Below, one piece after another: positions 11,096 to 60,636 of a stretch of DNA of 64,000 bases. The stretch is taken from positions 186,001-250,000 of IMG/VR virus record IMGVR_UViG_3300032053_000002; one strand, given 5' to 3'. The notes beneath the pieces are model-generated. The model was not told where the DNA came from. It saw only the letters and a list, made by a program, of their open reading frames with translations, and did no database searches. Numbering within the stretch: position 1 is the stretch's first letter; every line of letters starts with the position of its first letter. The translations under genes were made by a program, and so were the position numbers.

Positions 11096-12532
11096 TCATA
11101 ATTCAAAAAACTTAATAGATTTTTTAGATTCCATTGCAATAGTAGATGTGAATGGTTTAATATAAACTTTAACGTCTTTAATCATTTCACGAAATTTATC
11201 TTTATCCTTTTCCTGAATAAAATAATTTGTGAATCTAGAGTCTGGATTATCCTTGACTCCATGCTGCAATAACCAACGGCGAGTCCATTGCCAGGCAGAA
11301 TTTTCGCTCATTACGTCGCTCGTTTGAGAAATAATGTCTTTTTTATATCCTATCCCATTTAAAATATAATAAATCCAATCGTTTCCGTATTTTGTATCTT
11401 GGATGGTTTTGGAATAAAAAGTTTCATTCATCGCGTTGTGAAGATTTTGTTTAAATTGGGTTTCAAAATCCGCCAATTTCCATTTAAACATTGGTGGAAC
11501 GGTTTTAACTAATTGCTCAAATTCGTCTTTTGTTTTAAAGAAAAATGGGTAATCAACTCCCAAAATTCTTTCCAGAGTTGGGTGACGATATACTATAACT
11601 GGTTTGTTTAATCTAACTCCGTCTTGTGATGATAAATTCCAGGTTGCGTAACCACTGACAAAACAAACTGACGCCAGACTATTCTCTATTAAATATCTAT
11701 ATTGCGAAAATTTTAAGTTTCTGGCGACCAGTTCTTTTGGAGCCCTAATGTCAGTGCACCAGACAATATATTCACCGCTATTCCGAAGATTTTCAGTATA
11801 TTCCATCATCATATCCCAGCCGGTTGATTTATTCCATCGGTGATTGAATACCAGTATTTTTTTATTTGTCGGAAAGTCTGATATCGGTTCAGATGGAGGA
11901 AAATCGTCCGAACTTAACGGCATACATTCAACTTTTTTCATCAAATTATCAATATTTAATCCAACAACCATATCTTTTCTAAAGTTTTTTTCATAATACA
12001 ATGGAGATTGTTCCGTATGAAAAAACGCCTTATCGGCAATATTTATTGCTTCCAGTTGTCGCATAAATGTTGGTGGAACTTGAGAAGAACCGCGAGAAGA
12101 CGGATTATCTACCCAGTGAAAGAATAAAAATCTATCAACGATTTCGCCGTATCTTTTTTCCGACAGAGAAGTCATTATATCCAACATTACTTCTGATTGA
12201 TGGTTAAAAATAAAATCAAAATCTATTTGCCGTAAATCTATATGTTTTCTAAATGCGAGAAAATCATAGTGGGTGCGATTCACCACTGCATTTTTTACAT
12301 ACTCAAAAGGAATATACGTAACGTTTTTTCGTTGGTCGTATCCGTCAAGTTTATTTATTTTCGGAACAATTACGTAGTGATGACAGAACGGCAGAAAATT
12401 AATTGTTTTTTCTAAAACTTTATAGTTTGAATCGGATTGATGCAAAAATGTTCCGTCCGGACTAAATTTTACTGGCGCAGAATAGTGAAGTATTCTCATT
12501 CCGTACAATGGGTGGTCAATATAATTTTCCAT
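11096..12532 (-). CDS. GT-B glycosyltransferase, paralog 1 (possible DNA base glycosyltransferase)
   Basis: ILVFNHRWN motif; aligns by eye over its full length with 19131..20657. Confidence 0.65.
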   Translation of the reverse strand: MENYIDHPLYGMRILHYSAPVKFSPDGTFLHQSDSNYKVLEKTINFLPFCHHYVIVPKINKLDGYDQRKNVTYIPFEYVKNAVVNRTHYDFLAFRKHIDLRQIDFDFIFNHQSEVMLDIMTSLSEKRYGEIVDRFLFFHWVDNPSSRGSSQVPPTFMRQLEAINIADKAFFHTEQSPLYYEKNFRKDMVVGLNIDNLMKKVECMPLSSDDFPPSEPISDFPTNKKILVFNHRWNKSTGWDMMMEYTENLRNSGEYIVWCTDIRAPKELVARNLKFSQYRYLIENSLASVCFVSGYATWNLSSQDGVRLNKPVIVYRHPTLERILGVDYPFFFKTKDEFEQLVKTVPPMFKWKLADFETQFKQNLHNAMNETFYSKTIQDTKYGNDWIYYILNGIGYKKDIISQTSDVMSENSAWQWTRRWLLQHGVKDNPDSRFTNYFIQEKDKDKFREMIKDVKVYIKPFTSTIAMESKKSIKFFEL

Positions 12533-12534
12533 AA

Positions 12535-12930
12535 TTATTTTGCCCACATGCCACTTTTAACAACTCTTGCAATTTTAGAATAAACTGCTAAATCGCGATA
12601 ACTATCTTCTACAGATTCATTATTTGCTTCCAATGTTTCTTTTATCAGAATAATATTAAACAATCTTTGCATCTTGTCATTGCATCGAAACCAAATCCCT
12701 TCTAAACTCACCATTATTTCCTTTATTGTTTTTAATTGGGTTCCGACCGCAATATTCCCAGTTCCATAATCGCTTTGTTTTTTACAGAACACAATATACT
12801 CTTCTAAAAGATAATGCTTGAAAGACGATGTTGTTTGCGGATAGTTTTTTTCCATTGTTTGTATTACTTCAATGTCTTTTTCAGACAATTCTGTTAATAA
12901 ATTTAATTCGTATTTTTTTTCTTCGCCCAT
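12535..12930 (-). CDS. DUF1599 / nucleotide-modification-associated domain 1 protein
   Basis: KQSDYG, RCNDKMQRL and ESVEDSYRDLAVY motifs. Confidence 0.8.
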   Translation of the reverse strand: MGEEKKYELNLLTELSEKDIEVIQTMEKNYPQTTSSFKHYLLEEYIVFCKKQSDYGTGNIAVGTQLKTIKEIMVSLEGIWFRCNDKMQRLFNIILIKETLEANNESVEDSYRDLAVYSKIARVVKSGMWAK

Positions 12931-12931
12931 A

Positions 12932-13471
12932 TTAACTCCTAGTTTTTAATAAATTTTTTATTTCTTCTTCAGTCTTTGCATACATTTTACATATTTTTAT
13001 GAGACTCTCTTTTAAAACGTCGGCAGAGAAAAATATCATTAAATAGTCGGTCGCATCTCGTTTTGATATCTGATAGTGATGCGCGATTAATTCTAATAAC
13101 TCATTGTTAAATCTTTTTTCTTTTTTTCCTTTGACGTATTTTAAAAATGTTCTGCCCTTTGGAATTATATTCCCATAGATTTTATACAACGCCTCAGGCG
13201 AAACATCATAACTTATTTTTTGAATCATGCTTACGATAGATAGCCAATCGGGGTTCATTGACAGATACCTATTTATCATATATGTAGAAAATGTTTTCCT
13301 GTCAGATTCCGATAAATTATCAAAATATTCCTTATCGTACTTATGTTCCGTAATATATTTGAGATGGTCGAAAAGAGTTATGGATTTTATTTTTTCGGCT
13401 TCATCTTTCGCCTTTTCAATAGGAAATTCTATCGGCAAATCCTCTACGATAAAAAAATCTCTATTCTTCAT
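12932..13471 (-). CDS. Clamp loader small subunit (gp62-like)
   Basis: FSTYMINRYLSM motif; position beside the clamp loader. Confidence 0.6.
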   Translation of the reverse strand: MKNRDFFIVEDLPIEFPIEKAKDEAEKIKSITLFDHLKYITEHKYDKEYFDNLSESDRKTFSTYMINRYLSMNPDWLSIVSMIQKISYDVSPEALYKIYGNIIPKGRTFLKYVKGKKEKRFNNELLELIAHHYQISKRDATDYLMIFFSADVLKESLIKICKMYAKTEEEIKNLLKTRS

Positions 13472-15743: not shown

Positions 15744-18281
15744 TTAAAAATCAAAATATTTATTTATCGCACTTCTTTGAAATGTCGGCATTTCCCAATT
15801 AACCGCTTTATAACAATCTTCTATTTTTGACTTTAAAATTCGCTCAAAGATTTTTTCTCTGTCTATGTATTTTCTCGCGAATTCCAAAACTTCTATTGGG
15901 TCGTCATATCCTCGAATGGCGAGTCCATCCATACCGAATTCATTTTCTTTTAAATACATCCAACGTATTTTTTCGCCAGATTTTATTGGAGAAAATTTAT
16001 TACGTAACTTGTAATAATCCAACAATTCATTGTGACTAACCGCCGCCTTAACATGAGCGGGAGTAGCTTTAATCCAATTTCCAAATGTCTTATTATTTGT
16101 TTTTTTATAGGTTTCAAATTTTGATACATTTTTTACAGAAGTTGGAACCGCAATTTCTTCTATTTTCACATTTTTGATCATCTCTTTAAAATCCAAAACT
16201 TTTTTATCAATTATATCTCGGTCAATATTTTTTAACATATCGCTGAGAAGTATAGTTAAAAAGTTTTTGAACGCGTTTGGAAAATTGGAACGAACAACAT
16301 CCAATCCTTTATAGTCTATTTCATCGGTTATTACGCCCTTGTCATAAATAACCCACAGCGCATATCTTTTTTTAGTTATCCATATTCCGCTCTTCGCGAT
16401 TATTTCTCTTTTTACGTCAAACCTATGAGAATCAACATTTAAAAAGTTTTTTCCAAACAACTTGAAAGAATTATTCAAAAAATCTTGAACCTGTATTGTT
16501 ATTTTAGAAATATGTTCCGTCATCTGCACGTCATCATTGGTGTCCACTTCCGGATATATTTTTTCTATTAATGGTTTTGCTGGGCAAAAAATAGAATCGG
16601 TGTCCATATAAATCACGTAATCTTTATGGCTTTCCATAATTTTGTTGTAATAATGATTTGTCATTAACTCCGTATATTTTATTAGACTAACTCCCGTTGT
16701 GGTGACCGCTTCTGCATTGGCGAGATCATAAAATCTAAAACTTGGCAGTCCCAAAACACCGTAAACAGAATTTAACATAACCTTTGCAATGGTTCTTCGT
16801 CTTTTATAGTATCGTGATTTTTCCTTGTCGCCTTTATTTCCATATTCTTTCATTAACGAGTCATAAATATTTTTATCCTTATTCCATTCTTCTAATATTT
16901 TTGGAATGATACCGATTTTGTCTTTTCTATAAACTACACCGTTAGAAGATATACAAAATCCATATTTTTCTAAAGTTTCTTGAAGTTCGTCGCCAGTAAA
17001 TTGATAATCTTTACCTAGCATATTTGCCGTGTATGAAACGGACTTATCTTTTAGATGAACAGAAGAGTCCCAATTTTCAACTTTTCCAACTTTAGTTTCT
17101 GGCGAAATATTTAATGTCAATACAATTGATGGGTATAGAGAAGTAAAATCTAGATCGTAAATCCATTCATATTTAGCAGTTTCCGGAGATTTTACGTACG
17201 CACCAGAAAATCTTACGTCGGTATCACTCATCAACTTTCTATTTTCTGGATTTTTATTTGGAGCGACCAACTTATGATGCTTCATATAAGTCAATATCGC
17301 ACCCTCTATCCACCGACTAGAATAAAATATATCTTCATACGGAACGTGACCTTTGTGGCAAATACCCTGAACTAAATCTATGAAATTTAATTTTTGATCT
17401 AGTTTAACCACTAATTTTGTGTCCACCAGAGAATATTCAATAAACTTGTTTATATCGTCTTTTCTCAGTTTACCAAAGTTTCCATCGTATTTTACTTTCC
17501 CTTCTCCTAATTCGAGGCGAGAAATAAAATCCAAACTATACGATGAACGTTCTTTATACGCATAATTTCTATACAGTGGGAGATAATCCAGACACGACAC
17601 CCCCGCAATAAAATATCTTCTTCGGTTTTCGTTATAAAAAATAATCCCAATGGGACTTAATTTTCTTGCATAATTTTCGCCCAACACTTTTAACAGACGA
17701 TGATATAAATATGGAACATCAAAATTATCTATGTTCCACCCAGTAATAATCGTCGGGTGAATCTCTTCCCACTTTTGCAGAAATGCTAATAAAAGGTCTT
17801 CTTCGTTAGCAAATGAAATAATTTCTTCGTTTTCACGACGATATTGTTGTATTGTATTTTCATCGTCCAAAACATAAACAAAATAATCATCGGAGATCTG
17901 GTCGTATATGGAAATGGCGGTGATTTTATTTTCCGCTTTTCTAATGTCGGGTAGACTAAATTCGGTTTCTACTTCAATATCAAAAAATAAAATTCGATGG
18001 CCGGTGGAAATATCATCACTTTCATAATATAAATCAACTAAAATTCTAGTTTCAGACGACACATCCGATTCAAATATCTTTCCCTTTTCCGCATCCCACT
18101 TTGTCCACGAGTGTACCTTACTAACTTTTTGTCCGTAGATTGTTTCGTAATCACCGACGTCGCCCAATTTATATGCATAATTGATAAAATCAAACTGTTT
18201 ATAACCCAATTTGTCATCCCAAATATGCGCTATACTTTTTCCGAATGTCGGTGTTCTTTGAATAAAAATGTTTTGATAAAT
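15744..18281 (-). CDS. gp43: Family B DNA polymerase, probable ATT start
   Basis: Exonuclease DIE motif, DFTSLYPS, KVMLNSVYG, YMDTDS; frame stays open upstream to ATT at 18281 (MYQNIF), 9 nt after AGGAGG. Confidence 0.95.
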   Translation of the reverse strand: MYQNIFIQRTPTFGKSIAHIWDDKLGYKQFDFINYAYKLGDVGDYETIYGQKVSKVHSWTKWDAEKGKIFESDVSSETRILVDLYYESDDISTGHRILFFDIEVETEFSLPDIRKAENKITAISIYDQISDDYFVYVLDDENTIQQYRRENEEIISFANEEDLLLAFLQKWEEIHPTIITGWNIDNFDVPYLYHRLLKVLGENYARKLSPIGIIFYNENRRRYFIAGVSCLDYLPLYRNYAYKERSSYSLDFISRLELGEGKVKYDGNFGKLRKDDINKFIEYSLVDTKLVVKLDQKLNFIDLVQGICHKGHVPYEDIFYSSRWIEGAILTYMKHHKLVAPNKNPENRKLMSDTDVRFSGAYVKSPETAKYEWIYDLDFTSLYPSIVLTLNISPETKVGKVENWDSSVHLKDKSVSYTANMLGKDYQFTGDELQETLEKYGFCISSNGVVYRKDKIGIIPKILEEWNKDKNIYDSLMKEYGNKGDKEKSRYYKRRRTIAKVMLNSVYGVLGLPSFRFYDLANAEAVTTTGVSLIKYTELMTNHYYNKIMESHKDYVIYMDTDSIFCPAKPLIEKIYPEVDTNDDVQMTEHISKITIQVQDFLNNSFKLFGKNFLNVDSHRFDVKREIIAKSGIWITKKRYALWVIYDKGVITDEIDYKGLDVVRSNFPNAFKNFLTILLSDMLKNIDRDIIDKKVLDFKEMIKNVKIEEIAVPTSVKNVSKFETYKKTNNKTFGNWIKATPAHVKAAVSHNELLDYYKLRNKFSPIKSGEKIRWMYLKENEFGMDGLAIRGYDDPIEVLEFARKYIDREKIFERILKSKIEDCYKAVNWEMPTFQRSAINKYFDF

Positions 18282-52948: not shown

Positions 52949-53000
52949 AATACAATCTCCCAGTTATTATAAATATAAATATAAAGATTTTTAAAAAGTG

Positions 53001-53852
53001 TTATAAATATTTCTTCAGAAAGGTTATAAGTTTAGGAAGTTGTTCTTTTTTTATAAAAATTATTTCCCAGCGAGTTACTCCGTCCTGTTTCAGTACTATA
53101 TCGTTTTCATTATCAACATACGCAATAATTGGCATCCCTTCCCCGACTTCTTTTGGATTGATGGTCTGCAAATCTTTTTTTTCTTTAATCAAATTTTTTA
53201 ATTTCATTATGTTATCTCCCAGCCCTTTTTTCATTCTGAATCTTGTCGCCGCGGGAATCTCGCCAGGTAAGGCTCCAGGAACCCTATGTCGCGACCCCAT
53301 TCCCGGCGGAACTTTTACGTTACGTTTCAACATCGGCGACACCATGTGTTGAGCCCCCTTTTCAGAATCAGATCTTTCTTCACTTCCAACATAATCTTTT
53401 AGTGGAATGAACTGAATTTTATTTTTTCCGGCAGAAGAATCCCATTTATCGTTATTCCTTTTACTGTTGGGATTTATCATTTTTTCATGTTTACTTATAA
53501 TAACTTCTATACGATATTTCGGGTCGTTAGAAATTTTTATATTTTTGCCAAGTTTTATATTTATTTCGGATTCCAGATCAGCGGCAACTTTTTTTATCAT
53601 ATTCTTTGGCGGATATTGCCAGAAAGAAATTATTTTCTTATTTGTCCATACTCTCCCAGGATATTTAAAATTTTCTCGATCTGCATGGGAGTGCATATCA
53701 TCATAGTATTGACGAATATTATTATGTGTCCCACTACTAACTCTCATTTTGTTTTTATAGTATCCAAAGCAAATTGCGCTATTGTCCCCCCAACTCAATC
53801 CCTTTTTGTCGATAAAATCCGGACTTTCTAATATTTTTTTTAATTTAATCAT
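53001..53852 (-). CDS. Probable head-internal protein with a nested in-frame start at 53207
   Basis: N-terminal MIKLKKILE and internal MKLKNLIKE with its own GGAG. Confidence 0.55.
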   Translation of the reverse strand: MIKLKKILESPDFIDKKGLSWGDNSAICFGYYKNKMRVSSGTHNNIRQYYDDMHSHADRENFKYPGRVWTNKKIISFWQYPPKNMIKKVAADLESEINIKLGKNIKISNDPKYRIEVIISKHEKMINPNSKRNNDKWDSSAGKNKIQFIPLKDYVGSEERSDSEKGAQHMVSPMLKRNVKVPPGMGSRHRVPGALPGEIPAATRFRMKKGLGDNIMKLKNLIKEKKDLQTINPKEVGEGMPIIAYVDNENDIVLKQDGVTRWEIIFIKKEQLPKLITFLKKYL

Positions 53853-53876
53853 TTTTTATTTTCTCACCTATCTCCT

Positions 53877-53939
53877 TATAAATATAAAGATTATTTGTTT
53901 TTTTAGAACCGAGTGTTTTTTTATTTTTTTATATTTATA
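53877..53939. promoter_or_regulatory. Divergent pair of TATTTATA motifs
   Basis: 53877-53884 on the minus strand and 53932-53939 on the plus strand, each upstream of its gene. Confidence 0.65.
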
Positions 53940-53970
53940 CACTACGTTTAAAATAAAAGAGGGAATAAAA

Positions 53971-55068
53971 ATGGAAAGATGGCAAAAAATTCTGCAAAAA
54001 AGTTTAACGAAACCCGAACAAATTGCTAAAAAATTTAATTTACCGTTATCGGAAATTCAACAAGTAAATAAATCATTTAAGACTCGTATCACTCCGCATT
54101 TCGCCGCATTGATAAAAGAAAACGGCGACGCACTGTATCGTCAAGTTATACCTGATAAAAACGAATTATTAGAAGGAGATTCTGACGAAGACCCGTTAGG
54201 AGAAGACGGAGATTCTCCCGTCCACAACATCGTTCATCGCTATCCAGATAGAGTATTATTTTTAATCAGCCATGTATGCGCATCTTATTGCCGTTTCTGC
54301 ACGCGCAAAAGAAAAGTAGGCGACGCATCAAAAATCAGTTGGAAATATGTTGATGAAGGGATCGAATATATCTCCAATCATTCGGAGATTCGCGACGTTA
54401 TTTTATCTGGTGGAGATCCATTACTTTTATCTGATGACAAAATAGAATATGTTTTACGAAAACTTCGGGATATTCCGCACATTGACATCATCCGCATTCA
54501 CACGCGCGTTCTCGCGTTTTTACCGCAGCGCATCACGGCGAAACTATTAAAAATGCTAAAGAAGTATCATCCACTGTTTATGAACGTGCATTTTAATCAT
54601 CCAGACGAATTGCATCCGATGGCAGTTAAAGCATTAAATAGATTGTCAGATTCAGGAATACCGTTGGGGAGTCAAACCGTTTTGCTCAAAGGAGTTAATG
54701 ATGATCCGATTATCATGAAAAAATTGATGCAAAAGTTATTAAAAGCCAGAGTAAAACCGTATTACATTTATCAGGCCGATAGAGTGTTTGGAACGGATCA
54801 CTTTCGTACTAGTGTTGAACGTGGTTTAGAAATTATGGAAAATTTAAGGGGGTGGACGTCGGGATTGGCGAATCCTTATTACGTAATAGACGCGCCAGGT
54901 GGTGGTGGCAAGATACCACTTTTACCTAACTACGTTATTCGCCTCACCGATGATGAAGTCGTGTTGAGAAACTATAAAGGGAAAATGTTTAGATATAAAC
55001 AATCTGATAACGAACAAATAAAAGTGGAAGAATTGATAGGCGAAAATTTAGACTTATCGTTGGTTTAA
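53971..55068 (+). CDS. kamA: Lysine 2,3-aminomutase (KamA family radical SAM, PLP)
   Basis: HRYPDR, CASYCRFC, ILSGGDPL, YQADR, DAPGGGGKIP; start MERWQ after GAGGG. Confidence 0.92.
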   Translation: MERWQKILQKSLTKPEQIAKKFNLPLSEIQQVNKSFKTRITPHFAALIKENGDALYRQVIPDKNELLEGDSDEDPLGEDGDSPVHNIVHRYPDRVLFLISHVCASYCRFCTRKRKVGDASKISWKYVDEGIEYISNHSEIRDVILSGGDPLLLSDDKIEYVLRKLRDIPHIDIIRIHTRVLAFLPQRITAKLLKMLKKYHPLFMNVHFNHPDELHPMAVKALNRLSDSGIPLGSQTVLLKGVNDDPIIMKKLMQKLLKARVKPYYIYQADRVFGTDHFRTSVERGLEIMENLRGWTSGLANPYYVIDAPGGGGKIPLLPNYVIRLTDDEVVLRNYKGKMFRYKQSDNEQIKVEELIGENLDLSLV

Positions 55069-56719: not shown

Positions 56720-57361
56720 TTATCGTTTTCTCGATACCGATGACCTTCCTGAAGACCGATGGGATTGTGATACACTTTGTTTGCTTGTGTTGCCAGTGGG
56801 TCGCGTATGAACTTTCGGAGTGTTATTTTCAACCCTTTGTCTACTTAATGGTTTGAATTCGGAACGTGAACGGGTAGGCTCCTTTCTCTTAATCGTTCCA
56901 CGAGTATTTTGTTTAGCGACTCTATTTCCATTTAATTCGCGAGTATTGTTATAGATTCGTTCTCTTTTAATAGGTTGTCGCCTAATTTGTTGCGCCGTAT
57001 TGGATATCTGAGTTCGGTGAGTATTCATCGGGCGACGATCATAAAAAGAGTAATGATGGTTAGCAGCTAAATAGTGTGGGCGACTATGATAATAATGGTC
57101 GTGGTAATAATAGTAATCGGGATAATAATATGGATAATAGTAATAATAATCAGGCCAGTAATAATACGAATAATAATATGGATAATAATAGTACGGAGCC
57201 CATCCCCAATAAAGTTCTAAATAAACTCGGGAATAACTTTCCGTGTCAACGCAGGTTACACTATCACTGTATACATCGTTGTCAGTCTGGGCGACAACCC
57301 ACGGTGTGCAAGACGACAAAAGTAAACCTAACATCAATACAAATAATAATTTAATTTTCAT
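56720..57361 (-). CDS. Lipoprotein with a Tyr-rich tract and an Arg/Ser-rich disordered tail
   Basis: LLLSSC lipobox; YYYYP/DYYYY repeats. Confidence 0.7.
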   Translation of the reverse strand: MKIKLLFVLMLGLLLSSCTPWVVAQTDNDVYSDSVTCVDTESYSRVYLELYWGWAPYYYYPYYYSYYYWPDYYYYYPYYYPDYYYYHDHYYHSRPHYLAANHHYSFYDRRPMNTHRTQISNTAQQIRRQPIKRERIYNNTRELNGNRVAKQNTRGTIKRKEPTRSRSEFKPLSRQRVENNTPKVHTRPTGNTSKQSVSQSHRSSGRSSVSRKR

Positions 57362-57429
57362 GGCGACTTTCTCCATCTATTTACTACTATAAATATACTA
57401 CAAATATCATACCAACTTTGAGAAATAAA

Positions 57430-57729: not shown

Positions 57730-57758
57730 ATTATACTCACATATAAGTAGTTAGTTCC
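57730..57758 (-). promoter_or_regulatory. Putative middle promoter GGAACT-N17-TATAAT
   Basis: Upstream of cspA; a TATTTATA lies 10 bp further upstream. Confidence 0.68.
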
Positions 57759-57787
57759 CAATAATAATATAAATATATTTTTTCGGC

Positions 57788-58309
57788 TTACTTTTCTACG
57801 TAGAGTGGTGTTCTCGCACTTTTTTGAATTTCGGCTCTTTCTGTCATTCTTCCACGAGAATGCGCATGGCTAATAGCAAGATCCGACAATAAATGAGATT
57901 CCCACGCACCTGCGCAGTTTGTGTAGTTATACTTTTCAATCAAATCTATTGAGCCCATCGGATTCAAAAAACAATGAACTATTCTATGAAAAAGAGGCAG
58001 AATTTCATCTTCTTCATAAGTCATAGCCAAAACCGAATATCCATGAAAAATTTGAAGGAAAACTTTTAGATATTTTTTGGTTATCTCTTGATCTTCCTCA
58101 TAATCCGATATTAAGTAATATACCGCCCTTTCATCCAGAAATTTAGTTATTCCTCTTACATATTTCCCTTTACACCGAATAACTGAAAAAGTTCCTTCAT
58201 AAAAGAAATGCCAAGTATCATCTTTATGGAGAATTTTTTCATAGAGAGTCTTAAAAAGTTCTCTATCATAAATCGTAGTTTCTAGTAACTTTATTTCTTT
58301 TAATTCCAT
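57788..58309 (-). CDS. Possible Lant_dehydr_C (thiopeptide biosynthesis domain)-like protein
   Basis: WHFFYE..IR, YEED, IFHGYS, IVHCFLNPMG resemble the W.F.RY/Y.PE/F..DS/H...NR pattern. Confidence 0.4.
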   Translation of the reverse strand: MELKEIKLLETTIYDRELFKTLYEKILHKDDTWHFFYEGTFSVIRCKGKYVRGITKFLDERAVYYLISDYEEDQEITKKYLKVFLQIFHGYSVLAMTYEEDEILPLFHRIVHCFLNPMGSIDLIEKYNYTNCAGAWESHLLSDLAISHAHSRGRMTERAEIQKSARTPLYVEK

Positions 58310-58596
58310 CGTGTGCTCGTTCCCATTAAACCGGTTTCTAAACCTTGAATCCAGTGCGGTTCGCCATTTAGCCATTCTATTTCGTCGGGAATATCCCAAA
58401 CAATATTGCCGCAATCATAACACCGCGTTCCCATGGCTCCGACTCCTTGAGCACCGCCACCTAACGTATTTGAGCCACGGCGCCAATGTGAATACTTCAG
58501 TTTTGCTGAACCGCACTTTTTACATTTGGGCAATCTGAGATAGGCGACAATCGGTAAAAGAATAATAACTAAAACTACTAAGAGAAAAATATACAT
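58300..58596 (-). CDS. Membrane-anchored zinc-ribbon protein
   Basis: N-terminal TM; CKKCG and CYDCG. Confidence 0.55.
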   Translation of the reverse strand: MYIFLLVVLVIILLPIVAYLRLPKCKKCGSAKLKYSHWRRGSNTLGGGAQGVGAMGTRCYDCGNIVWDIPDEIEWLNGEPHWIQGLETGLMGTSTRWN

Positions 58597-58624
58597 AGGC
58601 GACTCCCCATTTTTATTTTAATAT

Positions 58625-58653
58625 AATATACAAAATAAAAAAGGAAATGTCAA
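58625..58653 (-). promoter_or_regulatory. Sigma70-type early promoter TTGACA-N17-TATATT
   Basis: Exact spacing; intergenic. Confidence 0.75.
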
Positions 58654-58661
58654 GGTTTATT

Positions 58662-60491
58662 TTACCTGCTATATATCAACTCATATTTTAGGTTTCCGCA
58701 ATCCCAAACTCTATCGTATTCGTTTAGTTGCATATTTTGCCATTCGGTAAGGTTAGGATCGTATTTTTTTAATTTCTTATGTAAGACTTTTTTCCTAAAA
58801 TTAAAACGATGTATTCTACTACTGCCGTTCATATTAAAATACCAATAACTAGGAGATGTTTCTGATACTTTTGTAAATCCCATCTTATTGTATAGATTGC
58901 TGCCGGATTTTGTCCAACGGCGATCGGCGAAACTTATTATTTTTTCTGGAGAATATTCGCGCACAAAAAAATTGAGTAATTTACTAGCTAATCCATTTGA
59001 CCGGACAGATGTTGCAAATCTCATCAATTCATATTCTCCTTTATTTTTTCCAGACCCAACAGACCTTTTTGATTTTCCAAAAGTCATCACGGCAACCAAC
59101 TCATTATCATAAAATGCACCTAATTTTATTTTGGTATTGTCACTTCCTTGTATGTGATTTTCGTTTAGGAATTTGTTTTTTGATGCGTTGTCTATTTCTT
59201 TTATATCACAATTTCTAGCATAAACTTTTCTGGTTTCATCGGACAATATGTATTCTAATCTGTTTTTTACTATATTTTGTTTTTCTATCCATTCATCTTC
59301 AAATATCTGAATTAAATGAATTCCCTTGCTCTCGGCTAATGAAGTCTTACTTAGATGATATTTTTTATCTTTGTTTCCATTTATTTCGGAATGCCAAAAT
59401 ATACCATTATATTCTATACCAATTTTTTTATCTGGAATGTAAAAATCTAGCTCCTTCCCGTTCAATGTTTTTCTATCATTTCTTATTATTTCGCCAGAAT
59501 ATATTTTCTTCAAGAAGTTATTTATTTCGTCTTCGGCTTTAGAAACACCGCTCCACAATAACGGATAACACGTTAAACATCTTGGAATGCGCCCATTTTC
59601 CAAGCTGCCAAAAAATATATTATTGCACTTTTTACAACGAAATTCATATTTTTTATTTTTAACTCCCTGATAATCATTTAAGGTAAATAACACTTCAACG
59701 TATTCGCGTATTTTAGGTGAGCTTAAAAAATTATTATACACCGTTTCAAATAATGATTTTTTAATCTGCGCCATTCCTTCTTCGGTTTGAGTAAAAGAAT
59801 TTGCACCGTATTTCTCTTGGTTGGTTTTCTTTATTTTTGCAACCATCATTTGTTTAATCATTGGGTCGTTAGCTTTCAACGATTGTAGTTTACTGGTTTT
59901 ATTAGATGTGGTTTTTTTTATTCCATATTTAACAATGTAATCCAATGGCAAGATATTATGTTTTTTTAGATGAGTATTGCTCAATTTAAAAAAATGTTCT
60001 TGACAAATTTCGCATTTAATTCTATTATCTGGAATTAGTAGTTTATCTTTTCTATCCTTTTTTATATGATATAATTTCCAGAGATATTTATATCGCGGGT
60101 ATTTATTCAGAAAGTCGTCTACGTTTATGTTGTGAATACTTTTTAGATGCGCAGTAAACACGCCAGATTTATTCTGTGTATCAGAAGTTTTCCATTCTTG
60201 GCACATTGGGCAGGAAAAACTTTCTTTTTTAATCGCGTTCTTTATTATGAAATTTTCTATGAAAAACGGAGAATTGTGCAAAGATGTTGAATGTGTAGTC
60301 AATGCTCCAGATAAATTATTTATATCAATACTTTCCCAATCGCATAATTTACATTTTATTATTTTTGAATTATCGTTGATTTTCCTCTTTACTGTTCGTT
60401 GTTTATTATATTCTTTGTCGGAAAACTTGCATTCATTTGAACAGTATATTCTTTTTTTGAAAATTTCTTTTTTACATATCTTACACTTCAT
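58662..60491 (-). mobile_element. Hef-like endonuclease: Zn fingers + Vsr-like nuclease + Mom/GNAT-like C-terminal domain
   Basis: ELDFY..IEYNGIFWHS..IFEDEW; ARNC..FL.ENHIQG..ELMRFA..ASKLL..SFADRRW; start MKCK after AAGGAG. Confidence 0.72.
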
Positions 60492-60573
60492 TTTCACTCC
60501 TTTAGTAGTTATTTTGACCTTATATGTATAGATATGAAATAAAATAAAAAAAGTTCCATTTTTTGTAAAATAA

Positions 60574-60599
60574 AAAACCCGCTCCGAAGAGCGGGTTTT
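60574..60599 (-). terminator. Intrinsic terminator after the major capsid gene (UUCG loop)
   Basis: AAAACCCGCTC-CGAA-GAGCGGGTTTT. Confidence 0.88.
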
Positions 60600-60636
60600 C
60601 ATTAGATTTTATAGTTTAACTGTTAAGTGTCAGAAA

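What the first reader, a model, noticed from the sequence alone, without database searches (positions are those of the whole stretch)
53877..55068. Phage-borne lysine 2,3-aminomutase wired to the phage's own promoter motif
Seen: the only substantial plus-strand gene, with an intact CxxxCxxC, the PLP lysine (GGGKIP) and aspartates in YQADR and VIDAP. It has TATTTATA 32 nt upstream, the same motif found before the structural genes, and carries two GGCGAC copies. At 365 aa it appears to lack the C-terminal Zn-binding extension. Established: those two Asp residues bind the lysine side chain in KamA and are replaced in glutamate 2,3-aminomutase; beta-lysine feeds EF-P modification, N-acetyl-beta-lysine osmolyte synthesis and lysine fermentation. 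No epmA, efp or ablB is in the window. Inference: a domesticated auxiliary enzyme supplying beta-lysine for translation tuning, or for DNA or virion modification; it also points to an anaerobic or micro-oxic host.
Basis: partly seen in the sequence, partly recalled or inferred. Interest (0 to 1): 0.72.

Follow-up and report, generated by a model that had tools for sequence, protein, structure and literature searches.

The report
Host-derived lysine aminomutase gene in phage
A 293-kb sediment phage carries an intact, selectively maintained radical-SAM lysine 2,3-aminomutase-type gene. It took this gene alone from a conserved four-gene cassette of Calditrichia-like bacteria, so it most likely raises beta-lysine supply in the infected anaerobic host. 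The kind of gene is known, and many other large phages carry one too.

Summary
Window 53971-55068 (+) encodes a 365-aa KamA-family radical-SAM/PLP aminomutase. It has an intact CxxxCxxC, the PLP lysine and both lysine-binding aspartates, and it lacks the Zn site. It sits inside a T4-like 293-kb phage genome.

It is not an assembly chimera. Two independent assemblies and contigs from four sediment runs join it to the same phage flanks. The 9 and 15 nucleotide differences between strains are all synonymous.

Phylogeny nests it (SH-aLRT 99) among Calditrichaceae genes. There the gene is always the last member of an uncharacterised cassette: two Ddl-like ATP-grasp ligases, a GNAT, then KamA. The phage took KamA alone. 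Its composition has drifted to match the phage, and it sits behind the phage's own over-represented upstream motif TATTTATA.

The phage genome has no GNAT, ATP-grasp, EpmA or EF-P gene. Five genomes carrying this KamA type (two with the cassette) lack EpmA, so the EF-P reading is not supported.

Best reading: an auxiliary gene that pushes the first step of a host beta-lysine pathway. At least 90 IMG/VR contigs, many from huge phages, carry solitary KamA genes, so this is a new member of a known but unstudied kind.

The parts
53971..55068 (+). KamA-family radical-SAM/PLP aminomutase CDS, 365 aa (P0001)
   Evidence: Pfam Radical_SAM plus LAM_C. TIGR00238 scores 301.6 against a cut-off of 199.2. 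PDB 2A5H matches at E 7e-110. The AF2 model matches 2A5H at TM 0.81.
54277..54300 (+). Codons of C103-x3-C107-x2-C110, the [4Fe-4S]/SAM cluster motif
   Evidence: Aligned to C125/C129/C132 of 2A5H. Invariant in alignments A1 and A2.
54778..54780 (+). D270 (in YQADR), equivalent to D293 of C. subterminale LAM
   Evidence: alignment. Invariant column.
54889..54891 (+). D307 (in VIDAP), equivalent to D330
   Evidence: alignment. Invariant column.
54910..54912 (+). K314 (in GGGGKIP), equivalent to the PLP-binding K337
   Evidence: alignment. Invariant column.
53932..53939 (+). TATTTATA promoter-like motif preceded by a T-run, 31 nt before the ATG
   Evidence: Promoter function was not tested.
53958..53963 (+). 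AGAGGG ribosome-binding site, 7 nt before the ATG
   Evidence: Read from the sequence.
53877..53884 (-). Divergent TATTTATA motif, 24 nt before the 283-aa minus-strand gene (53001-53852)
54124..54129 (+). GGCGAC copy 1 (Gly-Asp codons in KENGDAL)
   Evidence: The two nearest bacterial relatives examined read GGGGAT here; two more distant ones read GGCGAC.
54319..54324 (+). GGCGAC copy 2 (Gly-Asp codons in KVGDAS)
   Evidence: The nearest bacterial relative reads GGCGAT here; one of the six examined (P0007) reads GGCGAC.
55065..55068 (.). 4-nt convergent overlap of the KamA stop with the stop of the 103-aa minus-strand gene; no terminator lies between them

Best explanation
The gene encodes a working radical-SAM, PLP-dependent amino-acid 2,3-aminomutase that most probably converts L-lysine to beta-lysine.

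The ancestor of this phage lineage captured it from a Calditrichaceae-like sediment bacterium. There it is the last gene of a conserved cassette: Ddl-like ATP-grasp ligase, a second Ddl-like ATP-grasp ligase, a small GNAT, then KamA.

The phage kept only KamA and placed it behind its own TATTTATA-type upstream element with a good ribosome-binding site. It expresses the gene as an independent unit, antiparallel to the surrounding late or structural genes.

In the infected anoxic cell, the host would supply Fe-S assembly, a reductant, SAM and PLP. The host's own ligases and acetyltransferase would take the extra beta-lysine on to the cassette's still unknown end product, probably an N-acylated or ligated beta-lysine compound.

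Shown: enzyme family, intact catalytic residues, phage residence, bacterial origin, compositional adaptation, purifying selection, absence of partner genes in the phage.

Inferred: lysine as the substrate, promoter function, the host's identity, and that the host cassette consumes the product.
For: Family and residues:
- Searches give the family assignment and the residue alignment.
- The model matches 2A5H at TM 0.81, while other radical-SAM folds reach only 0.47 or less.
- The phage protein departs from the bacterial consensus at only 7 of 169 columns that are at least 90% conserved. Bacterial members range from 0 to 10.

Phage context:
- T4-type DNA polymerase, Gp23-type capsid protein, tail tube and baseplate hub are all in the window.

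Not a chimera:
- The identical protein sits in the same context in two further ENA assemblies of distinct strains, at 99.0-99.3% nucleotide identity.
- Contigs of runs X2-X4 bridge the junctions: X2 and X3 both of them, X4 the 3' one.

Purifying selection:
- 9 of 9 and 15 of 15 nucleotide differences between strains are synonymous.

Origin:
- The best hits are 72-74% identical proteins named Calditrichaceae or Calditrichia.
- The tree nests the phage row in a 10-row clade with SH-aLRT 99.
- All seven nearest bacterial genes examined sit in the cassette ATP-grasp x2, GNAT, KamA.
- The same cassette, in the order seen wherever it was checked, is in 45-48 of 80 loci from many phyla.
- The sister cluster (P0134) occurs in ENA assemblies whose accession numbers adjoin those of the phage's, probably one study.

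Compositional adaptation:
- Gene GC is 38.3% and GC3 is 35.5%.
- Phage genes average GC 35.3 +/- 3.9% and GC3 30.7 +/- 5.1%.
- Bacterial homologues have GC 44-56% and GC3 46-78%.

No partner in the phage:
- No GNAT, Ddl-like or other ATP-grasp, HDAC-like, EpmA or EF-P gene was found.
Against: - No activity, transcription or metabolite data exist, and no RNA run was listed.
- The protein and its whole bacterial clade fall below every NCBIfam equivalog cut-off. AblA scores 449.6 against 525.4. The substrate is therefore inferred from conserved residues only.
- The cassette's product is unknown, and no paper on it was found.
- The host is inferred only from the gene's own phylogeny and from apparent co-occurrence in one study.
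- Solitary KamA genes occur in at least 90 viral contigs, and almost none have a cassette gene nearby. This could mean that beta-lysine itself, rather than a host cassette product, is what phages want.
- The record is rated 91% complete, so a partner gene could lie in the missing part.
Confidence: 0.5

Rival explanations
1. Phage-specific use: beta-lysine made by the solitary enzyme feeds a phage process, not a host cassette. Candidates are modification of DNA or virion proteins, or a cationic counter-ion for packaging a 293-kb genome.
For: - KamA is solitary in 77 of 80 viral loci and has no conserved partner gene.
- The gene lies in the structural-gene region, 3.6 kb from a 646-aa gene with a weak Mom-family hit (24.4 bits against a cut-off of 27.1).
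- The genome has a strong lineage-specific hexamer signature, GGCGAC, that could be a modification target.
- In Vibrio and Pseudomonas phages, a distant KamA sits with a GNAT (GR11A) and near queC and topoisomerase II.
Against: - No ligase or transferase that could attach beta-lysine was found in the phage.
- The Mom hit is below its cut-off.
- The closest relatives by capsid protein share the GGCGAC signature, and the records of three of them hold no KamA. The signature therefore does not depend on KamA.
Confidence: 0.12
2. EpmB-like role: the enzyme supplies beta-lysine for beta-lysylation of elongation factor P, tuning translation of polyproline proteins.
For: - EpmB is also a short KamA-family enzyme without the Zn site (my knowledge).
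Against: - TIGR03821 (EpmB) scores 235.8 against a cut-off of 369.3, well below the AblA-type score.
- The phage has no EpmA or EF-P.
- Five near-complete genomes with this KamA type, two of them with the cassette, have only LysRS-length matches below the EpmA cut-off.
- The conserved partners are ATP-grasp ligases and a GNAT, not EpmA.
Confidence: 0.04
3. Different chemistry: the clade migrates the amino group of another substrate, for example a peptide-bound or other basic amino acid. 'Lysine 2,3-aminomutase' would then be a misnomer.
For: - The clade is below all equivalog cut-offs.
- It is always coupled to two ligases and a GNAT of unknown specificity.
- A 61-aa ORF precedes the cassette in two loci.
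Against: - The residues equivalent to D293, D330 and R134, which hold free lysine in 2A5H, are invariant across the clade and the phage copy.
- The best model match is AblA.
Confidence: 0.12
4. Lysine drain or catabolism: the enzyme lowers the host lysine pool or opens lysine fermentation for energy during infection.
For: - KamA is the first step of clostridial lysine fermentation (my knowledge).
- The host lives in anoxic sediment.
Against: - No gene assigned to beta-lysine 5,6-aminomutase or to later fermentation steps appeared in the phage parts annotated or in the bacterial loci examined; these families were not searched for directly.
- The conserved linkage is biosynthetic in type: ligases plus an acetyltransferase.
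Confidence: 0.06
5. Passenger: a functionless hitch-hiker carried along in a variable region rich in homing endonucleases.
For: - The region between the capsid and tail genes is variable among strains and relatives.
- A NUMOD3 endonuclease lies two genes away.
- GIY-YIG genes neighbour KamA in 12 of 80 viral loci.
- Close relatives lack the gene.
Against: - All 24 differences between strains are synonymous.
- All catalytic residues are intact.
- The composition has adapted to the phage.
- The gene has its own motif and ribosome-binding site.
Confidence: 0.06

Closest known systems
Clostridium subterminale lysine 2,3-aminomutase (KamA, PDB 2A5H)
   Same: - Same fold (TM 0.81) and 48% identity.
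- Same CxxxCxxC, PLP lysine, and residues equivalent to D293, D330 and R134.
   Different: - About 50 residues shorter.
- No C-terminal Cys cluster, and Cys268 is Asp, so there is no inter-subunit Zn site.
- Not part of a lysine-fermentation operon.
AblA/AblB pathway of methanogens (N-epsilon-acetyl-beta-lysine osmolyte; TIGR03820)
   Same: - Best-scoring NCBIfam model (449.6 bits).
- The bacterial source cassette also pairs KamA with a GNAT.
   Different: - Below the equivalog cut-off of 525.4.
- The cassette's GNAT gave no hit to any beta-lysine acetyltransferase model in NCBIfam (best hit rimI, 37 bits) and resembles PDB 2R7H, a 'putative D-alanine N-acetyltransferase'.
- The cassette has two extra Ddl-like ligases.
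- The phage has no GNAT.
EpmB (YjeK) of the EF-P beta-lysylation system
   Same: A short KamA-family enzyme without the Zn extension that acts as a stand-alone beta-lysine supplier.
   Different: - Scores 235.8 against a cut-off of 369.3.
- No EpmA or EF-P in the phage.
- EpmA is absent from five genomes with this KamA type.
KamA-family genes of other phages (Vibrio phages vB_VcorM_GR11A and GR7B, Pseudomonas putida phages such as Peetri, huge phages LR756500-LR756503, at least 90 IMG/VR contigs)
   Same: - Phage-borne, mostly solitary, and often in genomes of 200-640 kb.
- The lysine-binding Asp residues are kept in the four aligned phage homologues.
- In LR756500 it is likewise a lone gene on the opposite strand.
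   Different: - Only 37-58% identical, and outside the Calditrichia clade in the tree, so this is an independent capture.
- The Vibrio phage copy has a GNAT next to it and lies near queC.
Bacterial cassette: Ddl-like ATP-grasp x2, GNAT, KamA (uncharacterised; Calditrichia, KSB1, Gemmatimonadota, Ignavibacteria, Desulfuromonadales and others)
   Same: The source of the phage gene: 72-74% identity, nested phylogeny and the same short architecture.
   Different: The phage carries only the fourth gene, on its own promoter-like motif, with phage-like base composition.

Membership tests
KamA-family radical SAM proteins (TIGR00238; Pfam Radical_SAM + LAM_C) | Score above the curated cut-offs | tested here: met
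   TIGR00238 scores 301.6 against 199.2. PF12544 scores 75.2 against 26.7. PF04055 scores 57.6 against 29.5.
KamA-family radical SAM proteins (TIGR00238; Pfam Radical_SAM + LAM_C) | CxxxCxxC cluster motif and the PLP-binding lysine | tested here: met
   C103/C107/C110 and K314 align to C125/C129/C132 and K337 of 2A5H.
KamA-family radical SAM proteins (TIGR00238; Pfam Radical_SAM + LAM_C) | LAM fold | tested here: met
   AF2 model with pLDDT 78.8. The top PDB match is 2A5H at TM 0.81 and E 1e-36. The next folds reach 0.47 or less.
Lysine 2,3-aminomutase proper (KamA/AblA equivalog, TIGR03820) | Residues that bind lysine's epsilon-amino and carboxylate groups (D293, D330, R134) | tested here: met
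   D270, D307 and R112 are present, and the columns are invariant.
Lysine 2,3-aminomutase proper (KamA/AblA equivalog, TIGR03820) | Score above the equivalog cut-off | tested here: not met
   449.6 against 525.4. The bacterial neighbour P0015 also falls short, at 491.2.
Lysine 2,3-aminomutase proper (KamA/AblA equivalog, TIGR03820) | Zn site (Cys268 plus the C-terminal CxCxxC) of the clostridial enzyme | tested here: not met
   The Cys268 equivalent is Asp, and the C-terminal region has no Cys.
Lysine 2,3-aminomutase proper (KamA/AblA equivalog, TIGR03820) | Conversion of L-lysine to beta-lysine | not testable with these tools
   This needs an anaerobic enzyme assay.
EpmB (EF-P beta-lysylation, TIGR03821) | Score above the cut-off, and an EpmA/EF-P partner | tested here: not met
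   235.8 against 369.3. No tRNA-synt_2 or efp in the phage. No EpmA above the cut-off in five genomes with this KamA type.
Glutamate 2,3-aminomutase (TIGR04368) | Lys and Asn in place of the two aspartates (my knowledge of Ruzicka and Frey 2007), and score above the cut-off | tested here: not met
   Both positions are Asp. The score is 410.5 against 650.
Phage auxiliary metabolic gene | Truly part of a phage genome, not a chimera or host contamination | tested here: met
   Phage hallmark genes lie on both sides. The same junctions occur in independent assemblies and runs.
Phage auxiliary metabolic gene | Cellular origin, and maintenance by selection in the phage | tested here: met
   Nested in a Calditrichaceae clade. 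GC3 has adapted to the phage. 24 of 24 differences between strains are synonymous.
Phage auxiliary metabolic gene | Expressed during infection and altering host metabolism | not testable with these tools
   No RNA run was listed, and there is no cultured host.

The most novel reading that the evidence does not exclude
Large phages of anoxic habitats have captured solitary KamA genes again and again because beta-lysine itself serves a phage-specific purpose. That purpose might be a beta-lysyl modification of DNA or virion proteins, or a packaging counter-ion. On this reading it does not top up a host pathway, and in this phage it might be linked to the Mom-like gene or to the GGCGAC signature.
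Probability: 0.12. Interest if true: 0.8.

Novelty: new member of a known kind. Interest (0 to 1): 0.45.

Why it matters
KamA-type genes turn out to be widespread in large and huge phages: at least 90 IMG/VR contigs carry one. No paper I could find discusses them.

This copy has an unusually clear history. The donor clade, the source cassette, the adaptation of its composition and the purifying selection can all be traced. That makes it a good entry point for asking what beta-lysine does during infection in anoxic sediments.

It also draws attention to an uncharacterised four-gene cassette (two Ddl-like ligases, a GNAT and KamA) that is conserved across many bacterial phyla. The product of that cassette is probably what the phage manipulates.

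Tried and rejected
Searches that gave nothing or fell short:
- A single-sequence scan of IMG/VR found no relative. An alignment-based scan was needed.
It was used only to show how widely the cassette is distributed.
It was replaced by capsid-protein relatives.
- Literature searches for phage KamA, for the cassette, and for Calditrichota plus aminomutase found nothing relevant.
- No RNA run was listed, so transcription could not be checked.
It was rerun with permitted rows only.

Readings considered and rejected:
- Assembly chimera.
- The longer TTG start at 53782, which disagrees with the homologues' N-termini.
- The T4 late promoter TATAAATA as the relevant motif. It is the rarer orientation here, with 8 occurrences against 26.
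- GGCGAC as a feature specific to KamA. It is simply at genome-wide density.
- A terminator after KamA. Only weak 5-bp stems were found.
Full report
**What is there.** The window is bases 186001-250000 of a single 292,723-bp IMG/VR virus record. The record is rated 91% complete, has 35% GC and holds no tRNA in the window. It is a T4-like jumbo phage. The window holds a family-B DNA polymerase (phrog_262), a Gp23-type major capsid protein, a tail tube protein, a baseplate hub and a ribonucleotide reductase with a TSCPD domain, which is typical of the oxygen-independent class II enzymes (my knowledge). Of 414 crude ORFs, 377 are on the minus strand.

The finding is a plus-strand ORF from ATG 53971 to TAA 55068, 365 aa. 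It lies between the tail-tube module and the capsid module. It is the only plus-strand ORF above about 111 aa in the window.

**Observation check.** The protein has Pfam Radical_SAM and LAM_C domains. It passes the NCBIfam KamA-family model TIGR00238 at 301.6 bits against a cut-off of 199.2. It matches C. subterminale lysine 2,3-aminomutase, PDB 2A5H, at E 7e-110. In that alignment:
- C103/C107/C110 correspond to C125/C129/C132.
- K314 corresponds to the PLP lysine K337.
- D270 and D307 correspond to D293 and D330.
- R112 corresponds to R134.

The roles of these residues in holding lysine, and their replacement in glutamate 2,3-aminomutase, are my knowledge of Lepore et al. 2005 and Ruzicka and Frey 2007. 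The paper library did not return either.

The Zn site is absent. The Cys268 equivalent is Asp, and the short C-terminal tail has no cysteine. An AlphaFold model (pLDDT 78.8) finds 2A5H first, at TM 0.81. All other radical-SAM folds reach 0.47 or less.

TATTTATA lies at 53932-53939, 31 nt before the ATG. An AGAGGG ribosome-binding site lies between them.

**Is the motif real?** Yes. The window has 33 copies against 12.45 +/- 3.37 in shuffles. Genome-wide there are 88 on the gene-sense (minus) strand and 44 on the other. Within 60 nt upstream of ORFs there are 26 in sense and 8 in antisense. Shuffles give 4.0 +/- 2.0, and a second-order Markov model gives 5.5 +/- 2.3. Most sites lie within 40 nt of the start codon (25 of 36 within 120 nt, most often 20-29 nt) and share a T-rich extension, tttaTATTTATA, which the KamA site also has.

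The carriers are not chiefly structural genes. Four of the ten I annotated are homing endonucleases. The tail tube and baseplate hub have the motif further away, at 66-68 nt. The motif therefore looks like the promoter element of independently transcribed units. Its function and timing are untested.

A second copy, at 53877-53884 on the minus strand, serves the divergent 283-aa gene.

**GGCGAC.** The two copies in the gene are real. However, the hexamer is the most over-represented in the whole genome. There are 366 copies against 49 expected from dinucleotide content, in all frames and on both strands. That is one per 800 bp, so two copies in 1.1 kb is simply the genome's density.

**Not a chimera, and under selection.** The identical protein is encoded in the same phage context on two further ENA assemblies, of 20 kb and 3 kb. 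These are distinct strains, at 99.3% and 99.0% nucleotide identity. Logan contigs of sediment runs X2-X4 cross the junctions of the gene with its phage flanks, X2 and X3 both and X4 the 3' one; the X3 contigs across both junctions carry strain SNPs.

All 9 and all 15 nucleotide differences inside the gene are synonymous. The protein departs from the bacterial consensus at only 7 of 169 highly conserved columns, within the bacterial range of 0-10.

**Where it came from.** The nearest proteins are 72-74% identical. Where they are named, they come from Calditrichaceae or Calditrichia MAGs. KSB1, Marinimicrobia and Lentisphaerota follow.

A 126-row maximum-likelihood tree places the phage row inside a 10-row clade with SH-aLRT 99. 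That clade contains the Calditrichaceae sequences. The phage row is sister to the P0003 cluster and has a longer branch. It was a quick search without bootstraps.

A member of that sister cluster occurs in ENA assemblies whose accession numbers adjoin those of the phage's, probably one study. The phage copy has GC 38.3% and GC3 35.5%, within one standard deviation of phage genes. The bacterial homologues have GC 44-56% and GC3 46-78%. The capture is therefore old enough for the composition to have shifted.

Even so, 80 phages related by capsid protein (49-79% identity) have no KamA within the up to 10 kb fetched on each side of the capsid gene. The records of three of the closest relatives (14-78% complete), and of two more distant ones, have none anywhere. 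The gene is a lineage-specific accessory.

**The source cassette.** In each of the seven nearest bacterial genes examined, the gene is the last of four: Ddl-like ATP-grasp, Ddl-like ATP-grasp, small GNAT, KamA. In several of the closest relatives a 580-aa HDAC-like gene follows. Profiles built from these genes find the same cassette in 45-48 of 80 GTDB loci, in that order in every locus where I checked it. Those loci come from Gemmatimonadota, Ignavibacteria, Desulfuromonadales, Verrucomicrobiota and others.
- The ligases score below the D-Ala-D-Ala ligase cut-offs, and their best PDB matches are Ddl and VanA.
- The GNAT gave no hit to a beta-lysine acetyltransferase model in NCBIfam and resembles PDB 2R7H.

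I found no paper on this cassette.

**What the phage lacks.** Whole-genome searches found no GNAT, no Ddl-like or other ATP-grasp, no HDAC-like protein, no class-II aaRS-like EpmA and no EF-P. Five near-complete bacterial genomes with this KamA type, two of them with the cassette, have only LysRS-length matches below the EpmA cut-off. The EpmB model scores 235.8 against 369.3. The EF-P reading is therefore not supported.

**Other phages.** INPHARED holds KamA-type genes in Vibrio, Pseudomonas putida and huge uncultured phages, at 37-52% identity. IMG/VR holds at least 90 contigs, many of 200-640 kb, at 38-60% identity.

In those loci the gene is almost always solitary. Two of 80 have an ATP-grasp and one has a GNAT. 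No neighbour family recurs in more than 12 loci. The commonest neighbours are GIY-YIG endonucleases and SET-domain proteins. The Vibrio phage copy is followed by a GNAT and lies near queC.

**Mechanism proposed.** The steps below mix established chemistry with inference.
1. The [4Fe-4S] cluster reductively cleaves SAM.
2. The resulting 5'-deoxyadenosyl radical abstracts H-3 of PLP-bound lysine.
3. The amino group migrates through an azacyclopropylcarbinyl radical.
4. Beta-lysine is released and SAM is regenerated. Steps 1-4 are the established chemistry of the family (my knowledge).
5. The phage supplies only this first committed step.
6. The host supplies the cofactors, a reductant and the downstream ligases and acetyltransferase (inference).

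An anoxic or micro-oxic host fits the evidence. The phage comes from sediment, has three further radical-SAM genes, two of them B12-binding, and has the TSCPD-bearing reductase.

**Verdict.** This is a new member of a known but unstudied kind, a phage-borne KamA-family auxiliary gene. Its origin is unusually well resolved, and it points to an uncharacterised bacterial cassette.

Noticed in passing
Whole genome; in the window e.g. 54124, 54319, 55092, 55258, 55305: GGCGAC/GTCGCC is the most over-represented hexamer of the genome. There are 366 copies against 49 expected from dinucleotides, and the extended form TGGCGACA has 83 against 4.2. It occurs in all reading frames, on both strands, and is spread along the whole genome, somewhat unevenly. 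Close relatives by capsid protein (77-79% identity) share it, at 64 against 7.7 expected. More distant relatives and Calditrichia-like contigs do not. Its function is unknown.
   Followed up: partly
L001, L003, L015, L016, L019, L021 and 45-48 of L106-L185: There is a conserved, apparently undescribed bacterial cassette: Ddl-like ATP-grasp, Ddl-like ATP-grasp, small GNAT (like PDB 2R7H), then a short KamA. In Calditrichia-like genomes a 580-aa HDAC-like gene often follows. It is found across many phyla.
   Followed up: partly
Genome 12433-13263, 17075-17899, 83904-84608, 275981-277009 (outside the window): Four of the ten annotated genes that carry the TATTTATA motif are free-standing homing endonucleases (GIY-YIG/NUMOD or HNH). 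The motif seems to mark independently transcribed inserted genes.
   Followed up: partly
Window 57754-58671: A stretch of about 918 bp, holding the 208-aa ORF at 57788-58414, is absent from the otherwise 98-99% identical strain on L013. It is an insertion or deletion between the cold-shock gene and the 646-aa gene.
   Followed up: no
Window 53001-53916: Contigs in runs X1 and X4 join about 53064 to 53916, or 52991 to 53829. Co-occurring variants may therefore lack or replace the 283-aa gene that diverges from KamA. The flanks at the joints are short (20-24 nt), so this is uncertain.
   Followed up: no
Window 58662-60602 (-): The 646-aa gene next to the capsid gene has strong PHROG hits labelled homing or HNH endonuclease. 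It also has a weak Pfam Mom-family hit at residues 466-617 (24.4 bits, cut-off 27.1). A homologue is found in 19 of 80 related phages.
   Followed up: no
Genome 150.2-151.5 kb, 175.4-176.8 kb, 86.2-86.9 kb (L007, L008, L010): There are three more radical-SAM genes. Two have B12-binding domains, one of them beside FkbM-type methyltransferase and RmlD/epimerase-like genes. The third is a small SPASM-domain enzyme next to a methyltransferase/glycosyltransferase-like gene.
   Followed up: partly
L011 (Vibrio phage GR11A) 5923-7543; L012 (Pseudomonas phage Peetri): A distant KamA (37-38% identity) sits in a module of similar gene layout beside topoisomerase II. The GR11A copy is followed by a 155-aa GNAT and lies near queC. 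Three upstream proteins of 351-686 aa have no Pfam match.
   Followed up: partly
Window 56720-57376 (-): The 218-aa protein has a hydrophobic N-terminus ending in Cys, like a lipoprotein signal. It also has an extreme tyrosine-rich repeat region (runs of YYY, PYYY and DYYYY). It matches no family and has TATTTATA 11 nt upstream.
   Followed up: no
Genome ends (1-330 and 292.5-292.7 kb): The first 100 bases recur at offset 162, and the record ends inside a GGTTCC/GCTACTACC-type repeat. The linear record probably breaks inside a repetitive gene.
   Followed up: no
L026-L105 (viral KamA loci): SET-domain proteins neighbour KamA in 11 of 80 viral loci, and GIY-YIG endonucleases do so in 12 of 80.
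   Followed up: no
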